From the NCBI RefSeq assembly GCF_963506605.1, contig NC_083286.1, forward strand, positions 35,588,001 through 35,652,000: a stretch of DNA of 64,000 nt, read 5' to 3'. The notes under the pieces were generated by a model. That model saw only the letters and a program-made list of their open reading frames with translations. It made no database searches and was not told the DNA's origin. The stretch comes from Zootoca vivipara. Taxonomy: Eukaryota. Position 1 is the stretch's first letter. The number at the start of each line of letters is the position of its first letter. Positions 3,229 through 49,983 of the stretch are shown here, in pieces. The position numbers and the translations under genes were made by a program.

Positions 3229-3672
3229 AAGTTTCACTTGATAATCAAGAAAAATACTTTTGGAATTTGAAAAGTATTGCATTGAAACATATATTTAAAT
3301 AGTCTGGGAAAGTATCTGATGAATATTCAGTGAATAAGAGGGTTTGTATCTGCTGTTGTTCAAATTTCAAATGTGATGAATAGGAAACCCTGTTTTATAT
3401 GTTAATGCCATCTTAATAGGTGCAGACAAGATCTATTATAAATAACAGAATGTAAATTACTTTAAAGCATCCATCATAAACACAGGGAGTGGGGAATGAA
3501 AAGGTAGTATAAAGGAAGTAACATGCTAATTGTACAAGATATTTGAAAAATGGAAAAGGCAGTGAATACGGTGTGCCTTTTTCTAGTCCCCAAAACAATT
3601 TTACTTCGGAAAAGTATTTTCTGCTAAATATGTTGCCTAATATGCTTAATAACCATGAACTTCATTTTCTAG

Positions 3673-4868
3673 GATCTTTCGCTCAGATTGGACCAAAAAC
3701 CTTTTCCTTCTATTCAGCAGAAGAAGAATTTGAAAAAATCCCATTGGGAGACGATGACACTGAAAGCAATTCAGAAATGGGATCGGGTTCTATCAATGAA
3801 AGTATATTCCGTGGAGAAACACGAATGCTGCCAACTGAACGGATCTCTGGAGATATCAAGGAGTACCTGACTAGTGGATGGCTGACCGTTTTTGTTCCAT
3901 CAGTTTATACCTTAGTTGTCATGCTGAGTCTTCCTCTGAACGTCATGGCAATTCTTGTGTTCCTGATAAAAATGAAGGTGAAAAAGCCAGCTGCGGTGTA
4001 CATGCTCAACCTGGCTTCTGCGGATGTTCTCTTCGTGAGTGTGCTTCCTTTTAAGATTGCCTACCATTTTTCTGGGAACAATTGGGCATTTGGACCTGAA
4101 ATGTGTCGTTTTGTCACTGCTACCTTCTACTGCAACATGTACTGCTCTATCCTGCTGATGATGGTGATAAGCATGGACCGTTTCCTAGCAGTGGTGTACC
4201 CAATGCAGTCTCTGTCATGGCGCACGCGAAGGCGTGCCTTTGTGGTCTGTCTTGCCATCTGGCTTGTAGCAATAGCTGGGGTGATACCTCTGCTAATCAA
4301 TGAACAAACCCAAAGAATCCCTCAGTTAAACATCACAACGTGTCATGATGTGTCAAACAATGATGATCTTAAAGGCTATTACCTTATTTTTTTCACCGTT
4401 TTCTCTTCTCTTTTCTTTTTTGTGCCATTAATTGTTTCTGCCGTTTGCTATGTGTGTATCATTCGGAGTCTCAGCTCTTCCAATGTTGCTGCAAAGCAGA
4501 GCAAGAAAACACGGGCTTTGTTATTGTCTGTAGCTGTTTTCTCCATTTTTATTATGTGCTTTGGTCCAACCAATGTCTTTTTGTTAATTCACTACATCAG
4601 CTTTTCTTACAAAAACTACTTGGGGAATATCTACTTTGCCTATCTCATCTGTGTCTGTACTAGCAGTATAAGTTGCTGCATTGATCCTTTGATCTATTAT
4701 TACACCTCTTCTGAATGTCAGCGACACCTTATCCATCTTTTTTGCTGTAAAAAGACCTCTGAATCCTGCAGTACCAGTACCAGTGGCCAATTAATGACTA
4801 GGACCAGTAGAAGGGCTACTTGCACCAGTACACTTGGTAACAGTGTCTACAGGAAGCTATTAACATAG
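3673..4868 (+). CDS. F2R: Proteinase-activated receptor 1 (thrombin receptor), coding exon 2; exon 1 not found in window
   Basis: Acceptor ttcattttctAG at 3671-3672 (phase 1); GPK/TFSFYS then hirudin-like EEEFEKIP; 7TM with DRF, TTCHDV, DPLIYY; CC palmitoylation pair; terminal NSVYRKLLT (human NSIYKKLLT); synteny with F2RL1 and S100Z. Confidence 0.95.
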
Positions 4869-15008: not shown

Positions 15009-15505
15009 CACTAATGCAAAATGTACCTTCTTTAAAGAGGCATAAGCTTTCTAGCAACTCCTTGGGAGTGCTTTCAACTGACCTGTGCTCTCTTGACTCT
15101 TGATAGCTTTTAACGTATAGGACACCAGTATTTGCAGCACACTCTCTTCTGTTCTGTTATAGAATAGGATCAGAAAAGGGACATACTGAGAAGGAAATAA
15201 CTGATTTGTAGTAGAGAGACCTCCAAAGTAATAGAGTGTTTCAGCATAAAATAAAAAAGTAAGGAAGGGGTTTCAACATTAATTGTATTAGCACAGACCC
15301 CTCCTGGGATCTTACAGTGAGAGGGCAGGGATCACAAATCAACAACAAAATTAACAACAACATTCCTAATAATCCAGATTGGAAAATACAAATCTGTAAT
15401 TTAGTAGTCTAAACTTGTATTCTGATGAAGAGAGTAATACTGAATGTTATGCTGGTGTTGACATAATTAATTATACATTGCTTCTCCTTTCAAATTCATC
15501 CTTAG

Positions 15506-16563
15506 ATGCGGCTAGGAGCCTCTTGCCAATTTTCATCAGCCCTTCTACACATGAGAATGAGTTGGACATCCACAATCAACACACAGAGTCCATTCACCTC
15601 TCAGAGGACATTGAAACATTCATAACTAGTCCATGGGTAACTCGGTTTGTTCCTTCAGTCCACATTATTGTTGTTATGTTCAGTCTTCCTTTAAACATTA
15701 TTGCAATCCTTGTGTTTGTGGTCAAATTAAGGCTTAAAAAGTCAGCTACAGTGTACATGCTCAACCTGGCTTTTGCCGATGTCCTCTTCGTTTGTGTGCT
15801 TCCTTTTAAGATCATCTACCACTTTTCTGGAAACAACTGGACATTTGGACCAGAAATGTGTCGTTTGGCCACATCTGCCTTTCACTGCAACATGTACTGC
15901 TCCATCCTGCTGATGGTGGCGATAAGCATTGACCGTTTCCTGGTCGTGGTGTACCCAATGCAGTCTCTGTCATGGCGCACACCAAGACGGACCACTTTGA
16001 TCTGCTTTGCCATCTGGATTATAGCCATAGCTGGAGTGATTCCTCTGCTTCTCAATGAGCAAACAGAAAGATTCCCTCGCTTAAACATTACCACCTGTCT
16101 GGACTCACTAGCTTTCTCTACAATGAAGACATTTTATCGTTACTTTTCTGCAGTGTCTATTTTGTTCTTTTATATACCATTACTAATTTCTGGTACCGGT
16201 TATGTGTGCATTATAAAGAGGCTTTCTTCACCCCATGTTGCTACAAAGCCAGGTAAAAAGAAGCGTGCCATTCTCCTGTGTGTAGCTGTCTTGTCCTCTT
16301 TTATTATTTGTTTTGGTCCAACAAATGTCGTGTTTATGCTGCAAGTCTTCAGCCTTTTGCCTGAACAGCAGGTTGCGAATCTCTTGTTTGCATGCATGCT
16401 TGCCACTTGTATCACTACCATAAGCTGTTGCATTGACCCCTTGATTTATTATTATGCCTCTTCAGAGTATCAAAGGCAGGTCTGGCGCCTCCTGTGCAAT
16501 AGAAAGCATTCTGATCTGGAAAGGAGCATTCGGTTTACAAGCAGTAATATAGAAACCTCATGA
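15506..16563 (+). CDS. PAR1-like paralog B, exon 2 (7TM GPCR; spliced product about 376 aa)
   Basis: Open frame with PAR1-type NLAFADVLF, FSGNNW, CNMYCS, DRF, CCIDPLIYY; likely acceptor cttAG at 15504-15505 keeps phase 1. Confidence 0.88.
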
Positions 16564-20700: not shown

Positions 20701-20800
20701 ATGAGGTGCACCTCTGAGGGAGAAATAGGCGCTTTCCTCAAGATCTTCTTTTCTCTGTTCAGTATAGTCTCCACCGTATTTAGCACGGCAAGTGCAAACA
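20701..20800 (+). CDS. PAR1-like paralog C, exon 1 (MRCTSEGEIGAFLKIFFSLFSIVSTVFSTASAN)
   Basis: ATG, hydrophobic core, A-S-A signal cleavage motif, phase-1 donor GTGAGT at 20801. Confidence 0.8.
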
Positions 20801-21582
20801 GTGAGTACAACCCAACATCCTTTCTCCACAATTTAATATTTAAAGCAATGTGTTTATATTGTGCAATTGTTTCAGGGAACATTCACTTTCTCTTACTTTT
20901 CCAAATGATTGTGATATGGAGGAAGAACCAAGTTGAAGGGTTTTAAAAGAGGAGGGAGAATATCACTGTAACATGGGGAGAAATCTGCTTTGCAGTGGTT
21001 ATATCCAAATATTTTTAATATTCAGTTTATCAGACACTTGCACATAAAAAGTTTCCAAGTGAAATAAATCATAAAATATAATGATTGGTTTCACTGAACT
21101 GAATTCCAGTTCGTACCTTAGCTTAATCGGGGCTTCTGTTTTCAATTTGAATGGAATCTGGTTTGAGGGAATGCACATTGAATGAGAGTATTTCTCATGA
21201 AGCAATGGGACACAGATGGATTGTAGCTAACATCCTGTGTACCTGGCTTCAAACACTGATGGTGAAAGCACACTGGAGCAGGAATAAACAGCAATGTGTA
21301 CACAGCCTAAGAGCAGGAAAAGCCTAGTCAGAAGTCTAAGTCAGGGGATGCATGGCCCTCCATATGCTGTTCGGCTGTAAAGCATTAAAGGGTGATCCCC
21401 TATCCTCCAGATTACAGCAGTATCTGGATGGCCAAAGGTTCCTCAACCTTTGTTTAAAGGTTATTATCTCACATTTTCATGTAAATCCATACACTGAAGT
21501 TTATCATTTGGAATAGGGAAAGCCAGGGAGAAGGGATAGCAATGGAATTTTTGTCAACATCAGTACAGTAATTTTTAAAATA

Positions 21583-23917
21583 CAGTGGTACCTCTGGTTA
21601 CAAACTTTATTCGTTCCAGAGGTCCATTCTTAACCTGAAACCATTCTATTATTATTATTATTATTAAATATTTCATTGAGTTGCAAAAATATGTGCAACG
21701 TCTCTTGTAACATCTTTACAAATCAGTTTCATTTGTTGTGACATTGGGAAGAAAAGGGGGAAAGAGGTAGATGGGGGAGGGTGGGTGGAGGTGGGGTTGG
21801 GTGATGATGTTTCTATTTTGCTTAATATGTATGGGTTTTTTTGTCAGTGTCACTTGTGTAGGTTCTCTGCTGTTCGCTTGCGTTCCTTTGGTGGTGAGAG
21901 ATGTTGGGGTTGGCCTAGGATATGGTTGTTCATTTGGGGTTGGCTGTGGTGGTCTTTGTTTCGTGTGTGAGTGGGGTGGGTAGGTGTTTTGGGTCAGGTT
22001 AGCCATATTGATTCGTATGCTGTTGGTGGATTTTTGTTGTTGTCTTGTTGGGCTGTGTATGTGATAAAGGGGAACCATACTGGGGTGAAGCCGTCTTCTT
22101 CTATTTGTCCCCGTGTCAGTTTCAGCTAATTGGTTAATTTTTCTAGTAAGGCTGTTTCCCTTACTATTTGGTACCATTGGTCCATGTTTACTCCTGACAG
22201 GTCTCTCCAGTGTCTGGTTATGGTGTTTCTGGTTGCTGAGAGTAAGTGGGTTATGAGTTCTTTGTGATGTAGGTGGGCCTTATTGTCTTGGAAGATGTTT
22301 AGCAAGGCCAGTTCTGGGGTGATTTCTAATACTTGTTTGGTTATTTTACATATATCTCGTATGGTTGTTGTCCAGAATAGTTGGATTTTGGAGCACTCCC
22401 ACCACATGTGGAAATATGTGCCTGTTGAGGTGCACCCTCTCCAGCATTTTGGTGAGGTTCCTGGGCGTATTAGCACTAGTTTTCTTGGTGTTAGGTACCA
22501 CCTGTAGGTGAGTTTCAGAGTGAGTTCTTTCCTTTTTGTTGATATAGATTTAAAGGGGGGTTTAGACCACATTTTGGTCCACTGAGTGGGGCTAATCTCG
22601 TAGCGTATGTCATCTTCCCATTGTCTTTTGACTGTGTCTAGGGGATTTGTGGAATTTTGGAGTAGTATTTTATATATTGCAGATACCATCCCTTTGCCGT
22701 GTCCCTTTGTCGTTAGGAGGTTTTCAAAGGTTGTCAGAGGCCTAGTTGCTGCTGATTTTACCGCTGGGTTGCTTAGGAGGGCGTGTAGTTGGTGTTGTGC
22801 TAACCAAGGTATTTGGGTGTCTTCTAGTTTATCCAGTATTTCTTGTGTTGACAAAGCTTTGTTATTTTTATAAAGGTCTATTAGGCGATATAAGCCTTTG
22901 GCTTGCCAGGTTTTTATCTGGAGGTTTTGTGCTGCATGGTGGAATAATGGGTGGTAAGCCAGGGGGGTTAGTGGGGATGGGGTTGGGGATAGTTTGCCCA
23001 TTTCTGTTTTCCATGCTTTGAACATGGTTTGTGTGTACCTATTAAGTGTTGTGGGGATTTTCTTTTGTTTGGGAGGAATGGGTATGCTGTGGTGCAGATA
23101 TTTTCAATTGAGTCCCTCTGTAGGTTTATCCATTGTTTTGTCTCATCTTCCAGTATGTATGGGATTATATGTCGTATTTGATTGGCTCTGTAATACATTT
23201 CTATGTTGGGGATTCCCCATCCTCCTTGTGAGGTGGGGCTATGCAGATATTTGGTGCTTATTCTTGGTTTTTTATGTGAGAAGATGAAAGAGTGTAGTTT
23301 TCTCTGCCATCTGCGAAGTTGGGTTGGGAGAATCCAGATTGGGAGGGTTTGGAATAGGTAGGTTAGTTTTGGGAGGGTGGTCGTTTTGATCATGGCCATT
23401 TTGTCTGAGAGAGTGAAATTCATATTGTTCCATCTCTTTAGGTCTTTGTTTATTTGTCGCCATAGGGTATAATTTGTTGAGGTTTTTGGTTATTTGTAAC
23501 CCTAGGTATCTGAACTTGGTGTGACAGAGTTTTATCTTGGTGATATTAGTGGGTTCTTTCTGGGTGTGAGGAGAGGTGTTGAAGCACATGGCTTCTGATT
23601 TTGTAAAGTTTACTTGTAGGCCTGACACTGTTGCAAATGTGTTGAGTTCTCTGATTAGGGAGGTTGCTGTGTTTAAGGGGTCTGGTGTTGTGACCATTAA
23701 GTCATCTGCAAAGAGTCCTAATTTGTATGTTCTCCCTTTTTTTATTTCTACCTGAAACCATTCTTAACCTGAGGTACCACTTTAGATAATGGGGCTTCCC
23801 ACTGCTGCTGCCGCACGATTTCTATTCTCATCCTGGGGCAAAGTTCTTAACCCGAGGTACTACATCTGGGTTAGCGGAGTCTGTAAGCCGAAGTGTTTGT
23901 AACCCAAGGTACCACTG
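21583..23917. mobile_element. Tigger/pogo-type MITE interrupted by an L1
   Basis: TA-flanked TIR CAGTGGTACC; uninterrupted relative at 59270-59509. Confidence 0.85.
21648..23749 (-). mobile_element. 5'-truncated L1-clade LINE (ORF2 RT C-terminus and zinc knuckle, frameshifted)
   Basis: FADD near 23701-23712, SGLQVNFTKS, GGWGIPN, CWRGC...HMWWEC; (TAA)n tail; 15-bp TSD ACCTGAAACCATTCT (21633-21647, 23750-23764). Confidence 0.9.
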
Positions 23918-24048
23918 TACCCTATTAAGTATAGCCAAATCTATAACTTCATTTGAATTAATATTCTCATGAGTAAACCAAAGTTGTTGTATTGACTTCT
24001 GTAACATTGTTAATATGGCCATTTATATATCTGATCTACATATTGCAG

Positions 24049-25136
24049 ATTCCACATTTCCCCTTATTGCTGCTGGTTTCCCTATATATTATACTCATGA
24101 GGAAAACAACTCCAATCAATCCACAAAGCGTGCATTTATCACAGAAGATGGTGAAAAATACTTGACTTGTCCATGGCTGACACGCTTTGTTCCTTCAGTC
24201 CACACTGCTGTGGTTATTTTGAGCCTTCCTTTAAACATTATGGCAATTCTCATGTTTGTGGTCAAATTAAGGCTTAAGAAGCCAGCAGTGGTGTACATGC
24301 TCAACCTGGCTTCTGCAGATGTCCTCTTTGTGAGTGTGCTTCCTTTTAAAATCGCCTACAACTTTTCTGGAAACAACTGGATGTTTGGGCCTGAGATGTG
24401 TCGATTTGTCACTGCTGCCTTCTACTGCAACATGTACTGCTCCGTCCTGCTGATGATGGTGATAAGCATTGACCGTTTCCTGGCCGTGGTGTACCCAATC
24501 CAGTCCCTGTCCTGGCGCACAGCAAGACGGGCCTCGATGGTCTGCTTTCTCATCTGGCTTCTGGCTATAGCTGGGGTGATACCTCTGCTTGTCAATGAGC
24601 AAACAAAGAGATTATCCCGGTTAAATATTACAACCTGTCGTGATGCAGTAGATATCTCTGCTTTTATGGATATATTTCGGCATTACTTTTCTGCATTATC
24701 TATTTTGTTCTTTTTTATACCGTTATTAATCTCCACCACCTGTTATGTGTGCATTATAAGGAAACTTTCTTCGTCCAATGTTGCTGCAGAGCCTAGTAAA
24801 AGGAGACGTGCCGTTCTCCTGTCTGTAGCTGTCTTGTCTTCTTTTATTATTTGTTTTGGTCCTACAAATGTCCTATTACTAGTGCACAGCTTGTACTTCT
24901 TACCTGATCAACCCCTTGAAAGTCTGTATTTTTCCTACATCTTAGCGGTCTGCATTGGTACCATAAACTGCTGCATTGATCCCTTAATTTATTATTATGC
25001 CTCTTCAAAGTGTCAAAAGCAGGTGTGGGATCTCCTGTGCTATAAAAAGCAGTCTGGTCTCGAACAAAGCAGTCAGACAACAAGCAGTAATGCCACAAAT
25101 CATTTTAGTGGCCTGAAAAATTTGTCTCAAGCATAG
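24049..25136 (+). CDS. PAR1-like paralog C, exon 2 (spliced product about 395 aa)
   Basis: Acceptor ttgcAG at 24047-24048, phase 1; intact PAR1-type 7TM. Confidence 0.9.
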
Positions 25137-26670
25137 AATTTTACAGTGTGTGGTACAGTATTCATAAATATAGGTGTTGCATGCCAAAGCATGCATAATT
25201 TGTCCCAAGCATAGCATCTTACATTAAATATGTTTGCAGTATGTGCAGTAATACTCATTTGTAAACCTAGTGTTGCATGCCACCTATTTTACAGCCTCTG
25301 TCTTTAACGTCCACGCATTCTTGCTCTAGAATATTTATGCTTTTTTCTTATATTCCAAGAAAAAGATATCAGACCATGGTTTTTCTGCAGCTGCTGTTAA
25401 AATAACGTCTGCCTAGAGACATGTTTTGCTCCAATGGTGATTGTATAGAAATAAATATTATATTTTGTTGTCCAGTTATTTTCTCATTATCTTTTCATAA
25501 CATTAACAAATGTGAACTGTTGCCATTTTACATCTACTGTATATGCAGTAATTATGAGTTTGCGGGCAAGGGGGCATCAATATGCTGATGGCACTAAGGT
25601 CTCTTTTTCCATAACATCTGTGTTGGGGGAGGCTGGGCTGTCTCTGGACCCGTGCTTGGATGTAGTGCAAGATGGATAAGGGAAAACCAGTCTGAGTTGG
25701 ATAGAATTAGGCTACAGTTTATTGATTACAGAGCAACAGGTTTGATGAAGGTATCAGGCATGGATCACATCCATGGGATCACATAGCCCATTTGCCGCTT
25801 GATAAGCTTATTTTTTGACCATCACGGTTACTCATCCTGGCATGAACCGCTATCTAATGAGCTTCCTCTGGCCACCGGCAGGGGGTGCCATGGCCTGTCA
25901 GCCCACAAGCTGGACTTCTGGACAGAAATTGCTGCCTCCAAGATCCCTCAAGGGGACCCCCTACGAGCTGCGACAAGGTGCCCCCTCCTCTACCCCTCCC
26001 TTATCCAGGGCATTTTTAAAAGCAGGAATTCACAGGAACTCAGTTCTGGCACCTCTCAGGTAGGCACCATTGCTATTATAAGAGAACAACAGAGGTGTTC
26101 ATGGTGAGTTCTGGCACCTCTTTTTCCAGAAGAACAGCACTGCTCTTACATGACAACAGTTGTGACAATTTAAAAGTGTAGTGGAAACAAATCAACAGAA
26201 ATTATTAAAAGGATGTCTGGGTGGGGAGATCGGCTCTGAACTGCAGTGAGGAGCAGCAGCGGGGGAGGGGGTCCCCTTAAATACTTCCAGAGAGGACCAG
26301 ACTCCCAGAACCTTCTATCTTGTCTGCTCTGGAAGTCCCTCCCCTCACCCACAGCTCCCAGCCCTTCACCGCAGCTCCATGTCTCACCCAGCTCCAAAGA
26401 GCCTGACCCAACGCAGAATATTCCTGGTGCTTCTGCTTCCTCCTTGCAACTGCCCCAGGCTGCAACAACTGCCCCCAGTAATCTGGGAATGGGAGGATTC
26501 TGGCAAGAACCTTTTGAAACAGGAATATGATTTCATTCTGTTTGCAAAGAACGTGTTGGTACATTCAGAGGGACCAAACTAGATGAGATGGCAGTGATGG
26601 TAGCTTTTCCAATAGAGAAGACGGAGCTTTGGTGTACTGTATTGCATAGCTTTTTGTCAGTCTCCCTGAT

Positions 26671-27278
26671 TGCTGTTGTTTAGTCGTTTAGTCGTGTCCG
26701 ACTCTTTGTGATCCCATGGACCATAGCACGCCAGGCACTCCTGTCTTGCACTGCCTCCCGCAGTTTGGTCAAACTCATGTTCGTAGCTTCGAGAACACTG
26801 TCCAACCATCTTGTCCTCTGACGTCCCCTTCTCCTAGTGCCCTCAATCTTTCCCAACATCAGGGTCTTTTCCAAGGATTCTTCTCTTCTCATGAGGTGGC
26901 CAAAGTATTGGAGCCTCAGCTTCACGATCTGTCCTTCCAGGGAGCACTCAGGGCTGATTTCCTTAAGAATGGATAGGTTTGATCTTCTTGCAGTCCATGG
27001 GACTCTCAAGAGTCTCCTCCAGCACCACAATTCAAAAGCATCAATTCTTCGGCGATCAGCCTTCTTTATGGTCCAGCTCTCACTTCCATACATCACTACT
27101 GGGAAAACCATAGCTTTAACTATACGGACCTTTGTCGGCAAGGTGATGTCTCTGCTTTTTAAGATGCTGTCTAGGTTTGTCATTGCTTTTCTTCCAAGAA
27201 GCAGGCGTCTTTTAATTTCGTGACTGCTGTCACCATCTGCAGTGATCAAGGAGCCCAAGAAGGTGAAATCTCTCACTG
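26671..27278 (-). mobile_element. BovB/RTE LINE 3' fragment
   Basis: ORF ...SESWTIKKADRRRIDAFELWCWRR...KSRTRLND, (CAA)n tail, near-TSD GTCTCCCTGATT/GTCTACCTGATT. Confidence 0.92.
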
Positions 27279-27622
27279 TCTACCTGATTAAATGTAGCCA
27301 AACAACTTAGCAGTAATAAACATTCAGAGTTGCCTAATGTAAGCAGACCGCTGAATCCAGTTTTTGTTGTCTAAGAATCTGAATTACGCTTGGCAACATG
27401 TGTGTGTGTGTGTGTGTGTTTGTGTGCAACTATAGGTTTTATCCAACAAAATTCTGCTCAGCGTAGATCCATTGAAATTAATGGACCCAACTTAGACTTG
27501 TCCATTAACTTCAATGGGTCTACTCTGAGTAGGATGAACATTGGGGGAGCAGACCTACAGAGGACTAAGCAGGGAGGAGCTGCTTTGCACCATCTTTGCC
27601 CGGTCTGTTCCCCCAGCCATCA

Positions 27623-27625
<3 letters not shown>

Positions 27626-27692
<67 letters not shown>

Positions 27693-27693
27693 C
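27626..27693. repeat. (TG)n(CTGC)n microsatellite
   Basis: Seen directly. Confidence 0.95.
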
Positions 27694-27987
27694 ATCAGTT
27701 CATTGGGAGACACGATATCATACACCTGCACAATTGCAATAATAGTGGTTGTTCAAAGTTATCATGCTTCCAAAATGCTCATAAATGCATGATGACATCA
27801 CATAGTCCCAACACACAGACATAGTTGTATTTATTGATTTGGGGTTTTCTTTTCCCCACAGGCCTCCCTAAACGCAATACATAAATTCAAAGATTTCTGT
27901 GCTTAAAATACTGCAGATTTGCGTGTTTCTTTTCATAAATTTTGTACTTCACCAATAGGAAATGCTCAAGCAGTGATACTGATGTGG

Positions 27988-28444
27988 TGTCAGGGACTGG
28001 ACATCGGAGGAGGAATGGTGAACCTTCCCGAGAAGAGGAGGACAGTATAGATTTACAACAGTGGTTTGCAGAGGGTCACAGATCAGAGATAGAAGAGGGG
28101 GAAAGCTGGAAAATAATGGGAGAAGCAGAGCAGGAACAGCTGGCTGACATGTTATCACTAGAGAGCATTCTAGACCCCCCTTCTCCCAGGACCCGACGAG
28201 CAATGAAAGTAGGAGAGCGGAGAGCTAAGAGGCAATTGGCCCTAAGCAGCCACTGTAAGGGGTGTGTGCTGTTGATGACTGAGAAGGGAAGGGGGGAGGA
28301 GATTACTCGGAGTAATGCCATTAACCCAAGAGGCAACATTTCTGAGTCTCTCTGTGAACATTGACTAATATGCATTGGTATGAACTTATTGTATATCTAT
28401 TGCTTGCAGTCTGCCGTGAGAGGGAGGGATCAGATTCCCTGACA
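27988..28444 (+). mobile_element. Solo-LTR-like element (Gypsy-type ends)
   Basis: Terminal inverted TGTCAGGGA/TCCCTGACA and perfect 5-bp TSD TGTGG. Confidence 0.75.
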
Positions 28445-29174
28445 TGTGGATAGAATGTCCCTATATTCATCTGAGGAATGGTGAAGGGTAAGCTAAAGGT
28501 GTGCTACATAAAAGGTAATCTTAATATTTTCCCCTGAGCAGGGCAATATTTGCCACAGAGGAATGTGTGAGTGTGTGTTGAACTAGCCTACAGCACAAAG
28601 GTAACATTTACCATTGTTGATCCACTCACTTTTTAACCTCTCCCCCTCTGGCCATGTGGCCCTCCGAAAAAGGGCGGAAAGCCCTTGGGTGGGGGGGGGG
28701 AAGGTTTCCCAACCCGGATTTCATCTAATATTCATTCGGGCCTAATGTTGATTAATGGTAAAGCACTTTATCCACTGAGTTTTGCTTTTTAATGTATTCT
28801 CACCCTTATTTTTTTCTGGAAACAGATGAACTGAAAACCACAACAAATGCCTTTTAATCTATCAACGCAACATAATGGGCTTTCCAGGAATGCTTTTAGG
28901 AAGAGTCTTTTAGAAAAGTACAGAAGACTTGTCTGAGAGTGCTTTGGGGAGTAGCCAGAAAGAAGAGATCAAGAACGCTCTGCTCCCTATAGGATGAAGT
29001 GGTGTTATGGCAGTGTGGGTTGGCTCAGCTTCTTCTACGGATAAACTAACATTAAAGCCCAAAATAGGCAAGGAGATGAGAAGTGGATTTAGATCTCAGG
29101 GAGGAAACAAAGAAAGCTTTTTTTTTCAGGCAGATCCCTTCAGTTTCTTCTTAGAGACCTAGTGGAACCAAAAG

Positions 29175-29274
29175 ATGAGGTTCGCCGCTGGAGGAGAAAT
29201 GGACCCCTCTCTGAAGATCCTGTTTCCTCTGTTTAGTATGGTCTTCACCTTATTTAGCACAACAAGAGCAAAAA
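29175..29274 (+). CDS. PAR1-like paralog D, exon 1 (MRFAAGGEMDPSLKILFPLFSMVFTLFSTTRAK; second ATG at 29199)
   Basis: Hydrophobic signal peptide, phase-1 donor GTAAGT at 29275; homologous to the other two exon-1 copies. Confidence 0.82.
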
Positions 29275-29686
29275 GTAAGTACAACCCAACACAATTTCTC
29301 CACAGTTCAATATTTATAGTTAAAGCAAGGCATACGCAATGTGCAATTGTTTCAGGAAAATTTCACTCTCTCTGATCTTTCCAAATGATTGTGCTATGGA
29401 AGAAAAACCATGCTGAAGCAGCAAGAGTAAAGGAGGAGGGAGAGTATCCTTGTACTAGGGAAAAATGTACTTCTCAGTGGTAATATTTATCAGTCACTAG
29501 CACATAAAAAAATATCTAAGTGACTGCAACATTTTAAGAGCATAAGGTATAACGTAAGATCAGAAGAACAATGAATAAAGCATTTTGTAGGGGTTTTTTG
29601 CTCTAAAATTCCTACCCTATTTAGGGTGAACTCAGACTGTCTCTTCTTGCACAATCTGCCTCTGATATTTCGGCAAGGAGGTGATG

Positions 29687-30076
29687 TTGATGTTGTTGTT
29701 GTTGTTTAGTCGTTTAGTCGTGTCTGACTCTTTGTGACCCCATGGACCATAGTATGCCAGGCACTCCTGTCTTCCACTGCCTCCCGCAGTTTGGTCAAAC
29801 TCATGTTCGTAGCTTCGAGAACACTGTCCAACCATCTCGTCCTCTGTCGTCCCCTTCTCCTAGTGCCCTCCATCTTTCCCAACATCAGGGTCTTTTCCAG
29901 GGAGTCTTCTCTTCTCATGAGGTGGCCAAAGTATTGGAGCCTCAGTTTCAGGATCTGTCCTTCCAGTGAGCACTCAGGGCTGATTTCCTTCAGAATGGAT
30001 AGGTTTGATCTTCTTGCAGTCCATGGGACTCTCAAGAGTCTCCTCCAGCACCATAATTCAAAAGCATCAATTCTTC
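29687..30076 (-). mobile_element. BovB/RTE LINE 3' fragment in the paralog D intron
   Basis: Same RTE C-terminal ORF, (CAA)n tail, TSD GGTGATGT. Confidence 0.9.
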
Positions 30077-30926
30077 GGTGATGTACTTCACAGAAAATCA
30101 AGGATTTCTTTACTGCATAAGATCTTGTACTTCGCTAAAAAATAAACTTGTCTCTGTTAGATTGGGCAAAAAAGCTGGCCATAGTTCACTCCTCACAAGT
30201 TAGAGATCCAAGCACCCTTAAGATGCTACAGTTCCTATGATTCTTTGATGGAAGTTGTGTGCTTTAAATGTATGCGTGTGTACACAGGCAATGTCAGAAT
30301 ATGACTATGCCTACATTAGCAGCATGAAACACAGCGACTTGTCCCTGTCTCCCTTAGTTTCAAGTCACATTCTTAGATTGCTGCACACACCAGAGAAGGG
30401 GCAGGAGTGTCTTCACCTGGTGTCTATTACCACACTATTTCACCACACTGAACTCGCGTTCACTGAAGCTGTCAGCTGCATGTGTGCTGTCATCTGTACA
30501 TGCACAGTGGCTGTCACCCTAGCTTAATATTTGTTTCCATTTTCAAGCTGATGGAAGCTGGCTAGAGGGAAAGCACATCAAACAGGAATACTTCTTGAGA
30601 AGCTGCAAGTTGCAGGTGGATTGTGGCTAATGTCATGTGTATTTGGTTTCAAATACCAGCAGTATTGCTGGTAGACAACAATGGTCTAAAGGTTACTTTG
30701 CACATTTTCAGGATGGGGGGGGGGGAATAGCTGAAGTTTCTCATTAGCAATAGGAAATATGTAAATTTCATCTACAACAATAATTTTTAAAACCCCAAAT
30801 GTGTAATTCTATAATTTAATCTGAATTCATATTCTCATAAGTAAACTAACATGGTTGCATTGATGTTTGTAACATTAGCTATATAGGTATTCATAGATTT
30901 GATTTATATATTGCTTCATCTTTCAG

Positions 30927-32050
30927 ATTCATCCTTGGGCATCCAGCCTTTTTTTCGTAGTTTCCCTGTGATGGAAGAAAATGATAATAATATGGAAATA
31001 ATTACTAACAATACTTCGAACAACTCCAATCAATCCATAAAGCAAGTGGTTACCACAAAACAAGCTGAAAAATACTTGACTGGTCCATGGCTGACGCGCT
31101 TTGTTCCTTCAGTCCACACTGCTGTGGTTATTTTGAGCCTTCCTTTAAACATTATGGCAATTATCATGTTTGTGGTCAAAATAGGGCTTAAGAAGCCAGC
31201 AGTGGTGTACATGCTCAACCTGGCTTCTGCAGATGTCCTCTTCGTGAGTGTGCTTCCTTTTAAGATTGCCTACAACTTTTCTGGAAACAACTGGATGTTT
31301 GGGCCTGAGATGTGTCGATTTGTCACTGCTGCCTACTACTGCAACATGTACTGCTCCGTCCTGCTGATGATGGTGATAAGCATTGACCGTTTCCTGGCCG
31401 TGGTGTACCCAATGCAGTCTCTGTCCTGGCGCACAGCAAGACGGGCCTCGATGGTCTGCTTTCTCATCTGGCTTCTGGCTATAGCTGGGGTGATACCTCT
31501 GCTTGTCAATGAGCAAACAAAGAGATTATCCCGGTTAAATATTACAACCTGTCATGATGCAGTAGATATCTCTGCCATTATGGATATATTTCGGCATTAC
31601 TTTTCTGCATTATCTATTTTGTTCTTTCTTATACCGTTATTAATCTCTGTCACCTGTTATGTGTGCATTATAAGGAAACTTTCTTCGTCCAATGTTGCTG
31701 CAGAGCCTAGTAAACGGAGACGTGCCGTTCTCCTGTCTGTAGCTGTCTTGTCTTCTTTTATTATTTGTTTTGGCCCTACAAATGTCCTATTATTAGTGCA
31801 CAGCTTGCGCATCTCACCTGATCAACCCCTTGAAAGCTTGTATTTTGCCTACATCTTAGCGGTCTGCATTGGTACCATAAACTGCTGCATTGATCCCTTA
31901 ATTTATTATTATGCCTCTTCAAAGTGTCAAAAGCAGGTGTGGGATCTCCTGTGCTATAAGAAGCAGTCTGGTCTTGAACAAAGCAGTCAGACAACAAGCA
32001 GTAATGCCACTAACCTTTTTAGTGGCCTGAAAAAATTGTCTCAAGCATAG
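30927..32050 (+). CDS. PAR1-like paralog D, exon 2 (spliced product about 399-407 aa)
   Basis: Acceptor catctttcAG at 30925-30926, phase 1; PFFR/SFPVM; intact 7TM with TTCHD and DPLIYY. Confidence 0.92.
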
Positions 32051-33761
32051 AATTTTACAGTGTGTGGTACAGTATTCATAAATATAGATGTTGCATGCCA
32101 AAGATGTGAATATTTGTTTACAGTTCACATCTTTAATATCCATGCCATTCTTTCTCTAAAATATTTATGCTGTTTCTTATATTAAACGCTATATAAAATC
32201 AAAGAATCAGAGAATTTTAGAGTTCCCTTGATCAGGACACTATACTTCTGTTGATACAGCCTAGAATAGCACTTTGTTGCTGCATCATGCAAAATATTTC
32301 AAATTGGATTTATTTATTTTTGGCCGCTGTTAACATTAACATCTGAACTGATGTTTGTCCAGAGATCTGGTTTGTTCCAGTGAGGGATGTATATATAATT
32401 TGGGGGGGGGGGTCTGACAAGAGCCTTCTGAAACAGGAATGTGATTTCACCCTTTTGGAAAAGAACGCATTGGTACATTCACTCAAACTAGATAAGATTG
32501 TAGCTTTTCCAATAGAGAAGACACAGGAGGCAGAGTTTAGGTGTACTTTATAAGCGGTCATACTCCATGATTCAGTGTAACCAAACAAATTAGAAGTGAT
32601 AAACATTCAGAGTTGCCTAATGTAAACACACTATTGAATCAAATAGGTTTTTTGTGTGAGGGTGGGGGAGTTGCCTCAGAATTTGAATTACACTTGGCTG
32701 CAGATTGTGTATGTATGTGCATACAGACTATGGGTTACAGCCAGTGCTTTTTTTCCTGGGGGGACGCAGGGCTACGCATACCCCCTAAACATTTTGTGAA
32801 TCTAAGTTTGGCATCATTGAGGGGCAGTATTTCAATATGTGTAGGAAAATGAGAGTACCCTTAAACATTTAAAAAACAACAACAACACCACTGGTTACAG
32901 CAAACCAAATTCTACTCAGAGTAGACCAATTGAAATTAATGAACCTAAGGTAAACATGTACTTTAACAACACTGTGTCTACTCTGAGTAAGACTAACACT
33001 GGATGCAGCCTTAGACATTCGGACATTATGATACTAGACAAGGGAGCCGTGCAGACTGTGCAAGGGTTGGGCCTGTGCTAAGTACAAAGTGCAGTATTGG
33101 AGGTAAAACAGCAGGAGGTGGCAAGGGTGCTCATCCTGATGCACACAAAGATCTCTTCCTGCTGCCCTCTCTCTCAAAAAAAACACCCCTTTCTGATATC
33201 TCTATGCAGCTGGGCTTCCTCCAACTGCAGGAGCCTCCTGGAGAAGTTTGAAAAGGCTGGGGGGACTGACTTGTTTCTCCTCTCCCCTTTCAGCAACATG
33301 ATCAGATCTCCAGGTGCTTTATGTTGAATCTGAATGTCAGTGGGAGAAGGATGGGAGCAGGGGAAACCATGTATGAAATCACCTTGAGCAACTTAGAAAA
33401 AAGGGGGAAACAGAAATAAAATAAATAAACAATAATGGATAGACAAAGTTCCTGTTCGTTCATTCGTGGATGATGTCTTTCCTAGGGATCTGAAGAACAC
33501 TCCAAAGAGGACATTATTACCATCCGGATGGGCTGCAGTTCAGTGGCAGAGCACATGTGTTTTTTTCAGGAGGCCCCGGGTTCAGTTTCCACCATCTCCA
33601 GGTTTTGTTGGGAAAGGCTGTGTCCTGAAACCTGAACAGCCACTGCTGGTCAACATACACATCACATCACTGGTCTGATCCATCGGTTTTTCTTATGCTT
33701 TTGTTTTCATGAGCCTGCACTTGCCTAAGCTCGCTCCTTTTCCACCCCACTAATCTATTAT

Positions 33762-48167: not shown

Positions 48168-48883
48168 AATGTGTTTCTCTCCCTTGAGCCCAAGAGAGGG
48201 TTCGGTCCTTTTTGTTTTCAAAACTTTCATAGCAGTGCATAGCATGTCTGTCCTCACCAACTCTTCCAGACAGTGTCTGCTTGAAGTCAGCACACTCAAC
48301 TTCCACATCCTTTCCCCAATACCATTTATTCTTTGTGAAATACAATTACAATGCAAATGCAATACAAATACTCGCTGGATTGCTTGACAAACTCTTAAGA
48401 CACAAAATAATAAGCCTAATTGGCCACAAAAATGGCTGAGAACCAATGAAGTATAGTGGTTAGAGTGCCAAGCTAGTACTGGAGAGACCTGGGTTCAAAT
48501 CCCAACTCAGCCATGAAGCTCAAGGTTGAGACCTATCCTCAGGAACAATCTTATTTGCATCACAGGATGTTTGTTAGAATAAAATGAAGAGGGGGAGGCA
48601 GTCCACCTCCTTGAAAGAACGGTGGGATAAAAACATGATAGATAATAAAGTAAAATGACCTCCATAGGCTTCAGCAGGAACAATGGGCAGGCATAGGAAG
48701 GATTAAGCATGATGGATAAATAAGGTAAGAACAGCCACTGAGGGTTTTACCAGGAACAATGGACAGGCCTTCGCACTCTCTTCTTTAAAGATTCTAAATT
48801 TGTGGGTCGTCTGGCTTCATGATTATCATGTTTGGTTTTTCACCAATGGGCAGCTAACACTCTTGCTTTTATCTCCTTTTTAG

Positions 48884-49983
48884 AGAGAAATCCAACCAAC
48901 CGGACAAAAGGAAGAAGCTTCATTGGTCATAAGGTCAATGCAAGCAACGCCTCTAAAGATGCATACACTGTGGATGCTTTTGCAGCCAAAATCCTCACTG
49001 GCAAATTGACTACAGTCTTCCTGCCCACGGTCTACATTCTAGTGTTCATCATTGGCTTGCCAAGCAATGCTATGGCTCTGTGGGTCTTCTTCTTGAGAAC
49101 GAAAAAGCGGCACCCAGCAGTGGTCTATATGGCTAACCTGGCAATGGCAGATCTCCTCTTCGTTATCTGGTTCCCTCTGAAGATTGCATACCATATTAAT
49201 GGCAATAACTGGATCTATGGCGAAGGCTTGTGCAAAGTACTCGTTGGGTTCTTCTATGGAAACATGTACTGCTCTATCCTTTTTATGACATGCCTCAGCG
49301 TACAAAGGTATTGGGTGATTGTGAACCCAATATTGCACTCAAGAAAGAAGTCGGAAATTTCTGTGGGGATTTCAGCTGCAATATGGATACTCATCATCCT
49401 TGCCACGATTCCATTGTATCTTGTTGACCAAACTGTTTATGTTTCTAACCTCAACATCACCACTTGTCATGATGTCCTGCCTCATGCAGTGTTGGCTAAA
49501 GACATGTACAACTACTTTCTTTCTCTAGCAATTGGAGTCTTCTTATTCCCCGCTGTTCTCACAACTGTTTCCTATGTCCTCATGATAAAGACTCTGAACG
49601 CTTCCATTACAGATGAGAACATTGGGAAGAAACGGAAAAGAGCCATCAAGTTCATCGTTACTGTGCTTTCCATGTACTTGATCTGTTTTTTGCCCAGTAA
49701 TGTTCTGCTCGTGTTACACTACGCCCAGATCACAACCCACAACACCAGTAATGTATACGCCTTGTACATTGTAGCGTTGTGCCTTTCTTCCCTAAACAGC
49801 TGCATCGATCCATTTGTCTATTACTTCATTTCAAAGGACTTTAGGGACAACCTTAAAAACGCACTCCTCTGTCGAAGCGTGCGCACTACAAAGAGAATGC
49901 AAGTCTCTCTCTCATCAAACAGATACCCAAGGAAGTCCCCCTCTTATTCCTCCGGTTCACAGACTACGAAGTCAACCTACTAA
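48884..49983 (+). CDS. F2RL1: Proteinase-activated receptor 2, exon 2 (spliced product about 390 aa)
   Basis: Branch point CTAAC, polypyrimidine tract, AG at 48882-48883; NRTKGR/SFIGHK; LTGKLTTVFLP, PAR2-type QRY, TTCHDVLP, ALLCRSVRT, terminal TTKSTY. Confidence 0.96.

What the first reader, a model, noticed from the sequence alone, without database searches (positions are those of the whole stretch)
24152..32103. C and D share a near-identical 7TM core with sharp boundaries: gene conversion sparing the tethered ligand
Seen: from EKYLT (24152 vs 31066) to about 50 nt past the stop (about 25189 vs 32103) the copies are nearly identical; I count 16 aa differences over about 330 residues. The segment just upstream is barely alignable, and exon 1, introns and flanks are clearly diverged with different TE insertions. 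Inference: an older duplication with a recently homogenised signalling core and a variable N-terminal sensor, a constant/variable layout.
Basis: partly seen in the sequence, partly recalled or inferred. Interest (0 to 1): 0.8.

Follow-up and report, generated by a model that had tools for sequence, protein, structure and literature searches.

The report
Gene conversion between lizard PAR1-like genes
Two neighbouring thrombin-receptor-like genes of the common lizard had their membrane-spanning halves copied onto each other long after the genes were duplicated; this is an ordinary kind of gene conversion, and it left the outer, protease-facing ends different.

Summary
The window is Zootoca vivipara. 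It carries five PAR genes in a row: A (PAR1), B, C, D (PAR1-like) and E (PAR2-like).

- **Core versus flanks.** From 24152 to 25189 in C and 31066 to 32103 in D the copies differ at 35 of 1038 bases (16 of 327 codons). Exon 1, introns, flanks and the rest of exon 2 differ by about 25-30%.
- **Not selection alone.** Core dS is 0.074 and 4-fold sites differ at 7/143, against 261/1058 in non-coding flanks (P about 1e-10). The first 53 bases of 3'UTR differ once.
- **Age and lineage.** Exon-1 peptides show the duplication predates the Zootoca/Podarcis split. The near-complete core homogenisation is found only in Zootoca: 15 amino-acid differences, against 35-43 in four other lacertids.
- **Mosaic.** The centre looks C-to-D and the 3' end D-to-C. 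Two small islands keep old divergence.
- **New here.** A diverged "ghost" of C's original 3' end sits at 25190-25286, so the sharp 3' boundary is a break in collinearity, possibly an end-joined conversion junction.
- **Assembly.** Short-read contigs from three studies bridge D's junctions.

The mechanism is supported. A selected "constant/variable design" is not shown. First readers flagged conversion-like signatures at other loci of this genome; those are unchecked.

The parts
20701..20800 (+). Gene C, exon 1 coding part (signal peptide, 33 codons plus 1 base; GT donor follows)
   Evidence: The peptide is 27-28/33 identical to Podarcis C exon 1 and only 17/33 to Zootoca D.
20801..24048 (+). 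Gene C intron, with a LINE-like insertion (ORFs on the minus strand, 21716-23697)
   Evidence: The alignable parts differ from D's intron by K2P 0.25-0.33.
24049..24151 (+). Gene C, unconverted start of exon 2 (N-terminal exodomain up to the codon before EKYLT)
   Evidence: 24049-24104 is barely alignable with indels, and 24105-24151 differs at 11/47 sites.
24152..25189 (+). Gene C, homogenised tract: 7TM core, C-tail, stop (25134-25136) and 53 nt of 3'UTR
   Evidence: 35/1038 differences to D; dS 0.074; max chi-square segment.
24249..24270 (+). Island 1 inside the tract (TM1/ICL1). D keeps the D-type Ile and Gly seen in other lacertid D genes; C keeps Leu and Arg.
   Evidence: 3 differences in 22 nt; residue states.
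24894..24933 (+). Island 2 inside the tract (ECL3/top of TM7). C reads Y-F-L where D reads R-I-S.
   Evidence: 7 differences in 40 nt; scan statistic 556/20000. P. lilfordi C reads H-I-L at the same place.
25190..25286 (+). Ghost of C's original 3' end (last codons ..NLSQA, stop, start of 3'UTR). It is diverged from the tract copy and continues collinearly into C's own downstream flank.
   Evidence: the repeat finder: 25111-25145 vs 25189-25223 at 83%, and 25174-25186 vs 25270-25282 at 100%. Alignments: ghost vs D about 70-78%, new copy vs D 97.6%.
29175..29274 (+). Gene D, exon 1 coding part
   Evidence: Matches the N-terminus of RefSeq model XP_034955924.1 (P0121).
29275..30926 (+). Gene D intron, with a high-copy repeat fragment at 29696-30082
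30927..31065 (+). Gene D, unconverted start of exon 2 (exodomain with a candidate FFR/SF site and Asn-rich stretch)
31066..32103 (+). Gene D, homogenised tract (stop codon 32048-32050)
   Evidence: Contigs from three studies bridge 31066, and one bridges 32103.

Best explanation
C and D are two intact, two-exon PAR1-like receptor genes. They arose by a tandem duplication that predates the split of Zootoca from Podarcis; Lacerta agilis also has a copy of each. In the Zootoca lineage, non-allelic (interlocus) gene conversion later overwrote about 1.04 kb of exon 2 in both copies. This stretch covers the last residues before TM1, the whole 7TM core, the C-tail and 53 nt of 3'UTR. The exodomain-coding start of exon 2, exon 1, the introns and the flanks stayed at the old divergence.

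The product is a mosaic (inferred):
- The central part carries C-derived states in both genes, so the direction was C to D.
- The 3' part carries a D-derived state in both, and C still holds a diverged relic of its own 3' end just behind the tract. That fits a D-to-C copy that overshot and was closed by end joining instead of homologous annealing.
- Two short islands escaped conversion.

After conversion both genes stayed under purifying selection (dN/dS about 0.33).

Shown: the divergence contrast, the breakpoints, the phylogenetic incongruence and the ghost. Inferred: the number and direction of events, and the repair pathway at the 3' junction.
For: 1. **Silent sites.** 16 synonymous differences on 226 synonymous sites (dS 0.074), and 7/143 at 4-fold sites. 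Non-coding flanks differ at 261/1058 sites (JC 0.30). Fisher P = 2e-10 and 3e-9. The 3'UTR part differs at 1/53 sites, P = 1.6e-5.
2. **Internal control.** B-C core dS is 0.34-0.43. The only alignable B-C flank is 67% identical, so silent and flank divergence agree where no conversion occurred.
3. **Breakpoints.** Maximum chi-square is 217 against a permutation maximum of 18.7. Sliding identity steps from about 0.8 to 0.98 at 24150 and ends at 25189.
4. **Orthology outside the tract.** Exon-1 peptides are 27-28/33 identical for C-C, 29-32/33 for D-D and 16-18/33 for C-D.
5. **Incongruence inside the tract.**
   - Zv_C-Zv_D differ at 15 amino acids, against at least 27 to any ortholog. Paralog pairs of L. 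agilis, P. muralis, P. lilfordi and P. raffonei differ at 43, 39, 36 and 35.
   - The ML tree joins Zv_C and Zv_D with support 94/91.
   - Quartet site patterns with Zootoca favour species-wise over orthology: 6:2, 9:1, 18:3 and 16:2. All six quartets among the other species favour orthology, 11-18 against 0-4.
   - Six Zootoca-only residues are shared by C and D.
6. **Direction.** Zv_D has the C-derived ICL3 block (..NVAAEPSKRRR..) that L. agilis and P. muralis have only in C. Zv_C has the D-derived Gln at 25050.
7. **Ghost of C's old 3' end**.
8. **Assembly.** Contigs from three independent studies bridge D's 5' junction with D-specific letters, and one bridges the 3' junction. RefSeq models agree.
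Against:
- AU tests do not reject orthology clades at 0.05 (p 0.084 and 0.090).
- The k-mer contigs collapse C and D, so they cannot phase the two cores. No long reads were available.
- Direction rests on a handful of polarised residues and on an assumed species tree.
- The ghost could equally be a pre-existing small tandem duplication in C that merely set the limit of homology.
- Island 2 is only marginally significant (P about 0.03).
Confidence: 0.9

Rival explanations
1. There was no conversion. The core is simply more conserved than the flanks because it codes for a constrained 7TM domain.
For: The core is coding and under purifying selection (dN/dS 0.33). Exodomains of PARs evolve fast.
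Against: Synonymous and 4-fold sites are 4-6 times less diverged than non-coding flanks. 53 nt of 3'UTR are near-identical. The B-C control shows no such gap. Four other lacertids have 35-43 amino-acid differences in the same core. Zootoca-only residues are shared by both copies.
Confidence: 0.02
2. Assembly artefact: the shared core is a chimeric or collapsed assembly of one gene, or of two haplotypes placed in tandem.
For: No long reads could be laid. Logan contigs collapse the two cores. Two contigs leave D at 32103.
Against: The two cores differ at 35 fixed positions and sit in flanks that are 25-30% diverged with different repeats, so they are not alleles. Contigs of three studies join D's unique intron to D-specific core letters, and one joins the core to D's unique 3' flank. 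RefSeq models of both genes exist. Both genes have separate orthologs in four other lacertid genomes.
Confidence: 0.03
3. The homogenisation reflects a selected modular design. Conversion keeps a common signalling core, and selection removes tracts that enter the protease-sensing exodomain.
For: The tract starts 8-9 codons before TM1 and leaves the whole exodomain untouched. Smaller patches in Podarcis also begin after EKYLT. Six of the 16 residual differences lie in ECL2, ECL3 or the top of TM7.
Against: L. agilis, P. muralis, P. lilfordi and P. raffonei keep clearly diverged cores with an orthology signal. The 5' end coincides with a jump in mismatch and indel density, and the 3' end with a collinearity break, which alone can stop a tract. 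There is no GC3 rise or other sign of sustained conversion.
Confidence: 0.1
4. This concerns the 3' junction only. C already carried a small tandem duplication of its 3' end. An ordinary homologous conversion then overwrote the first copy and stopped where collinearity with D ends.
For: The structure [copy][ghost][flank] fits equally well. A collinearity break is a natural stop.
Against: This needs two events instead of one. Near-identity runs right up to the last base before the break (1 difference in the last 53 nt), whereas homologous resolution normally needs homology beyond the tract.
Confidence: 0.4

Closest known systems
Interlocus gene conversion between the tandem chemokine-receptor genes CCR2 and CCR5 (PMC8877049; PMC2720389)
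   Same: Both cases involve neighbouring rhodopsin-type GPCR paralogs from an old duplication. Parts of the coding exon are homogenised independently in different lineages. Both are detected by paralogs being closer than orthologs and by recombination breakpoints.
   Different: Here the genes are PAR1-like receptors of lizards. The tract covers the whole 7TM and C-tail and ends in the 3'UTR. Near-complete homogenisation is seen in only one of five sampled species. A relic of the overwritten 3' end is preserved.
Human PAR1 (F2R), solved structures 8XOR, 9D4Z, 3VW7
   Same: It is the best match of C (E 2e-128). Shared features are the DRF and DPLIYYY motifs, the ECL2 motif NITTC, a two-exon gene with the signal peptide in exon 1, and a position next to PAR1 and PAR2 genes.
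   Different: C and D are extra lizard paralogs with short, different exodomains. They have no hirudin-like acidic box. C has no Arg at the position of D's candidate cleavage site.
[quoted passage not shown] 2016, PMC5104497)
   Same: A copied tract that ends without homology and is rejoined to the second break end with little or no microhomology. Here 1 nt (G) is shared at 25189.
   Different: That work used reporter cells. This would be a fixed germline footprint, and the pathway is inferred from sequence only.
Published survey of vertebrate PAR genes (Jin et al. 2016, PMC4771116)
   Same: It covers the same gene family and the same cluster.
   Different: The survey reports one PAR1 copy in reptiles and lineage-specific expansion only in teleosts. 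This window has PAR1 plus three PAR1-like genes, and NCBI annotates such genes in many squamates.

Membership tests
Protease-activated receptor, PAR1 branch | Rhodopsin-type 7TM domain | tested here: met
   Pfam 7tm_1, E 1.5e-56 for C and 2.4e-56 for D.
Protease-activated receptor, PAR1 branch | Closer to PAR1 than to PAR2 or PAR4 | tested here: met
   PDB search: PAR1 2e-128, PAR2 1e-64, PAR4 2e-54. In the tree, C and D fall with B and the Rhineura PAR1-like gene, apart from the PAR1 (A) rows that were set as outgroup.
Protease-activated receptor, PAR1 branch | Two-exon gene with the signal peptide in exon 1, located in the F2R-F2RL1 cluster | tested here: met
   Exon models. Gene order A (PAR1), B, C, D, E (PAR2-like) on one strand. 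The D model equals RefSeq XP_034955924.1.
Protease-activated receptor, PAR1 branch | N-terminal protease site (P1 Arg) followed by a tethered ligand | tested here: inconclusive
   D has ..PFFR/SFPVME.. C has ..IAA/GFPIYY.. at the homologous place, with no Arg. Podarcis D has Ala there and P. lilfordi C has Arg. Nothing shows cleavage.
Protease-activated receptor, PAR1 branch | Activation by proteolysis and G-protein signalling | not testable with these tools
   Needs expression and protease or peptide assays. No RNA reads on D in the one RNA run sampled, of which about 6% was read.
Interlocus (non-allelic) gene conversion | Silent-site divergence in the tract far below that of collinear flanks | tested here: met
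   dS 0.074 and 4-fold 0.049, against flank JC 0.30. P 2e-10 and 3e-9.
Interlocus (non-allelic) gene conversion | Discrete breakpoints | tested here: met
   Max chi-square segment 24154-25189, not reached in 200 permutations.
Interlocus (non-allelic) gene conversion | Paralogs group by species inside the tract and by orthology outside it | tested here: met
   Protein level only. The AU test of orthology clades gives p 0.08-0.09, so this is strong but not formally decisive.
Interlocus (non-allelic) gene conversion | Both copies are real and separately placed in the genome | tested here: met
   35 fixed differences, junction-bridging contigs from three studies for D, and orthologs in four species.

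The most novel reading that the evidence does not exclude
The lacertid PAR1-like genes C and D form a protease-sensor pair. Recurrent, bidirectional conversion is tolerated only in the signalling core and is kept out of the exodomain by selection. The ghost at 25190-25286 is a rare fixed germline footprint of a conversion that was terminated by end joining.
Probability: 0.15. Interest if true: 0.55.

Novelty: new member of a known kind. Interest (0 to 1): 0.35.

Why it matters
- **Trees from the 7TM mislead.** This is a clean, well-bounded example of concerted evolution in a receptor family for which the published survey reports no reptile expansion. Trees built from the 7TM part of these lizard PAR1-like genes will mis-date the duplication. 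Orthology must be read from exon 1 and the exodomain.
- **A near-natural domain swap.** Zootoca C and D have almost the same core but different exodomains. They could be used to ask what the exodomain alone contributes to protease specificity.
- **A preserved junction.** The ghost 3' end offers a sequence-level view of how one such event may have ended.

None of this changes how gene conversion is understood.

Tried and rejected
- **Other lacertids' DNA.** Proteins were used instead.
- **Spliced models.** The joined exon 1 + exon 2 model of C was not built or searched. Exons were handled one by one by reference.
- **AU tests.** Tests of 'all C one clade' and 'all D one clade' were not significant (p 0.084, 0.090). 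This is partly because P. lilfordi and P. raffonei C are themselves patch-converted.
- **Polarising differences.** Using B and A nucleotides to polarise the 34 coding-core C-D differences was too noisy to use.
- **Apparent polymorphism in reads.** I first read C-type letters in contigs of X5 and X6 as polymorphic conversion. I rejected this because k = 31 contigs pop paralog bubbles and cannot phase across identical stretches longer than 31 nt.
- **Depth as copy number.** Rejected, because the tool gives contig-wide means.
- **Repeat ORFs.** Pfam on the repeat ORFs gave only one weak RVT_1 hit.
- **Biased gene conversion.** There is no GC3 excess in the tract.
- **Literature.** The searches found no paper on PAR gene conversion or on squamate PAR1-like expansion.
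Full report
**What is there.** The window is from Zootoca vivipara. The exact ORF of C and the RefSeq models XP_034955924.1 (D) and XP_034956142.1 (C, partial) are in the protein collection.

Five PAR-type exon-2 reading frames lie on the + strand:
- A, 3543-4868
- B, 15415-16563
- C, 24015-25136
- D, 30899-32050
- E, 48832-49983

All five hit Pfam 7tm_1. C matches human PAR1 far better than PAR2 or PAR4 (2e-128 vs 1e-64 and 2e-54). A is the PAR1 ortholog and E is PAR2-like, so B, C and D are extra PAR1-like genes between them.

Gene models come from homology and splice signals:
- C: exon 1 CDS 20701-20800, intron to 24048, exon 2 24049-25136.
- D: exon 1 CDS 29175-29274, intron to 30926, exon 2 30927-32050.

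D's model equals the RefSeq protein. I treated the exons separately by reference. The joined model of C was not built or searched.

**The observation.** BLASTN of the two loci gives a single high-identity block, 24105-25193 vs 31019-32106, at 95.7% over 1089 nt. The collinear flanks are at 76-90%.

At base level the near-identical part is 24152-25189 vs 31066-32103: 35 differences, no indel, 16 amino-acid changes in 327 codons. Divergence elsewhere:
- The 47 coding bases upstream differ at 11 sites.
- The first 56 nt of C's exon 2 and 92 nt of D's are barely alignable.
- Exon 1 differs at 23/100 sites.
- 5' flank and intron have K2P 0.25-0.36.

A two-breakpoint maximum chi-square scan over 2299 aligned sites returns 24154-25189. 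Its chi2 is 217, against a maximum of 18.7 in 200 permutations.

**Selection or conversion.** It does not.
- There are 16 synonymous differences on 226 synonymous sites (dS 0.074).
- 4-fold sites differ at 7/143.
- Non-coding flanks differ at 261/1058 sites (JC 0.30).
- Fisher P is 2e-10 and 3e-9.
- The 53 nt after the stop differ once (P 1.6e-5).

As a control, B against C shows core dS 0.34-0.43, and the only alignable flank is about 67% identical. So silent and flank divergence agree where nothing was homogenised. Purifying selection (dN/dS 0.33) acts on the core but cannot produce this pattern.

**Other lacertids.** The word search found orthologs in Podarcis lilfordi, P. muralis, P. raffonei and Lacerta agilis.

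Outside the tract, exon-1 peptides sort by orthology: C-C 27-28/33, D-D 29-32/33, C-D 16-18/33. The exodomains sort the same way. The duplication is therefore older than the Zootoca/Podarcis split.

Inside the tract, over 298 shared columns:
- Zootoca C and D differ at 15 residues.
- Each differs from every ortholog at 27 or more.
- The paralog pairs of the other four species differ at 43, 39, 36 and 35, while their D orthologs differ among themselves at 13-22.

The ML tree joins Zv_C and Zv_D with support 94/91. AU tests of the orthology clades give p 0.084 and 0.090, which is suggestive but not decisive.

Quartet site patterns are clearer:
- With Zootoca, species-wise against orthology counts are 6:2, 9:1, 18:3 and 16:2.
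- Among the other four species, orthology wins in all six pairs, 11-18 against 0-4.

Six residues found only in Zootoca are present in both C and D. So the near-complete homogenisation happened in the Zootoca lineage, after its split from the other sampled genera. It is not a general property of the gene pair.

**Mosaic and direction.**
- L. agilis and P. muralis keep a C-type ICL3 block (..NVAAEPSKRRR..) in C and a D-type block (..SVATKTAKKRR..) in D. The D-type resembles B and the Rhineura gene, so the C-type is derived.
- Zootoca has the C-type in both genes. P. lilfordi and P. raffonei have the D-type in both. These are independent events in opposite directions.
- In Zootoca, C-derived states in D (Ala at 24660 and 24693, Glu at 24789) point to C-to-D transfer in the centre. 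The D-derived Gln at 25050 in C points to D-to-C transfer near the 3' end.
- Two short stretches keep old-style divergence:
  - 24249-24270 has 3 differences in 22 nt. D keeps the Ile and Gly of other D genes there.
  - 24894-24933 has 7 differences in 40 nt. C reads Y-F-L, close to the H-I-L of P. lilfordi C. The scan statistic is P about 0.03.
- The three stretches between the islands differ by 2.1-2.7%.

I read this as at least two conversion events of similar age. The number and direction rest on few polarised sites.

**The 3' boundary.**
- Directly behind it, C carries a second, diverged copy of its own 3' end. 25189-25223 matches 25111-25145 at 83%, and 25270-25282 matches 25174-25186 exactly.
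- This ghost encodes ..NLSQA plus a stop. It runs on collinearly into C's downstream flank, which aligns with D's downstream flank.
- The ghost is about 70-78% identical to D's end, which is the old divergence. The copy in front of it is 97.6% identical.
- D has only one copy, and its homology to C's old sequence continues straight through 32103.

So the boundary is a break in collinearity in C, not in D.
- The simplest reading is that a D-templated copy overshot by about 79 nt and was rejoined to C's second break end with 1 nt of shared sequence. This is the non-canonical, end-joined termination of recombination described in reporter cells (PMC5104497). It agrees with the D-to-C direction inferred from residues.
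- The alternative is an older small tandem duplication in C that merely limited the tract. I cannot exclude it, and I put the two readings at roughly 55:40.

The 5' end has no such footprint. The tract ends inside a collinear stretch where mismatch density jumps, and indels begin 47 nt further up.

**Assembly check.** Only k-mer contigs of older runs and one raw RNA run were on offer, with no long reads. I laid 29100-32700 (3601 letters) on runs from three studies.
- Contigs join D's unique intron to the first 60 nt of the core, including the D-specific letters at 31082 and 31096. These are X1 30053-31126 with 0 differences, X5 30063-31126, and X6 30719-31268.
- One X6 contig spans 32058-32240 with 0 differences.
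- Two contigs (X1, X5) match D at 31848-32103 and then run about 870 nt into non-D sequence. That is what C's junction would look like, but the letters are not shown.
- These contigs merge paralog bubbles, so they cannot phase the cores. I therefore draw no conclusion on polymorphism or copy number.
- No RNA reads fell on D's exons in the part of the RNA run that was read.

The cores have 35 fixed differences, the flanks are 25-30% diverged with different repeats, and separate orthologs exist in four genomes. An artefact is therefore very unlikely.

**Meaning.** Both genes are intact and keep the PAR1 signature motifs.
- Six of the 16 residual differences lie in ECL2, ECL3 or the top of TM7: Arg/His next to the ECL2 Cys, Phe/Ile, the Y-F-L/R-I-S triplet and Ser/Ala. 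This is by alignment to human PAR1, and the residue roles are from memory of the PAR1 structures.
- That would fit a pocket adapting to different N-termini, but it is untested.
- The candidate P1 Arg is not even conserved within orthogroups, so 'tethered ligand' remains a label.
- The 'constant/variable' layout is a fair description of Zootoca. The evidence does not support it as a maintained design: other lacertids lack it, mechanical causes explain both ends, and there is no GC3 signal.

**Comparison and novelty.**
- The closest known case is lineage-specific conversion between the tandem GPCR genes CCR2 and CCR5 (PMC8877049, PMC2720389).
- The published PAR survey reports one PAR1 in reptiles and expansion only in teleosts (PMC4771116), so these lizard paralogs exist in annotation only.
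- My paper searches found nothing on PAR gene conversion.
- This is a new member of a known kind, with one less common detail, the preserved ghost junction.
- First readers flagged conversion-like signatures at other loci of this genome. Those are unchecked and did not affect this analysis.

Noticed in passing
window 15484-15516: In paralog B, the triplet homologous to the exon-2 acceptor CAG of C and D reads CAA (15491-15493). An in-frame AG lies at 15504-15505; using it would drop four codons but keep the ..AAR/SLLPIF.. motif. L. agilis B keeps the longer form.
   Followed up: partly
window 24894 (codon 24894-24896): RefSeq model XP_034956142.1 has His where the window's C has Tyr. The differing base equals D's base at the same place. 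It could be a SNP or a small segregating conversion patch.
   Followed up: partly
proteins P0129, P0132, P0124 (Podarcis muralis): Two P. muralis D models differ just before TM1: WM..SL (the Podarcis C-type) against WL..SV (the D-type). This suggests a polymorphic or assembly-specific conversion patch. P0124 fuses two C-like N-termini, hinting at an extra partial C-like copy.
   Followed up: no
window 24049-24151 and 30927-31065; P0002, P0003, P0129, P0130: The candidate P1 Arg is not conserved within orthogroups. Zootoca D has FFR/SF while Podarcis D has SFA/SF or YFA/SF. Zootoca C has AA/GF while P. lilfordi C has ILR/FA. The cleavage logic of these receptors seems to turn over quickly.
   Followed up: partly
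window 29705-30188 and 32125-32366: The first stretch is a very high-copy repeat (summed word depth about 1e6 in three DNA runs, also abundant in RNA reads). The second is a mid-copy repeat (about 1e4) that starts 20 nt behind D's tract. A related copy of the first lies at 26670-27276 behind C.
   Followed up: partly
window 3543-49983: The gene order is PAR1, three PAR1-like genes, then a PAR2-like gene on one strand. The published vertebrate PAR survey (PMC4771116) lists one PAR1 copy for reptiles. NCBI annotates PAR1-like genes in geckos, skinks, Rhineura and lacertids.
   Followed up: partly
window 24020-24065 vs 15470-15520 and 30900-30945: Around the exon-2 acceptor and the first codons, B and D are 88% identical, while C-D is 72% and B-C is 63%. 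So C, not D, is the copy whose exodomain start has diverged most.
   Followed up: no
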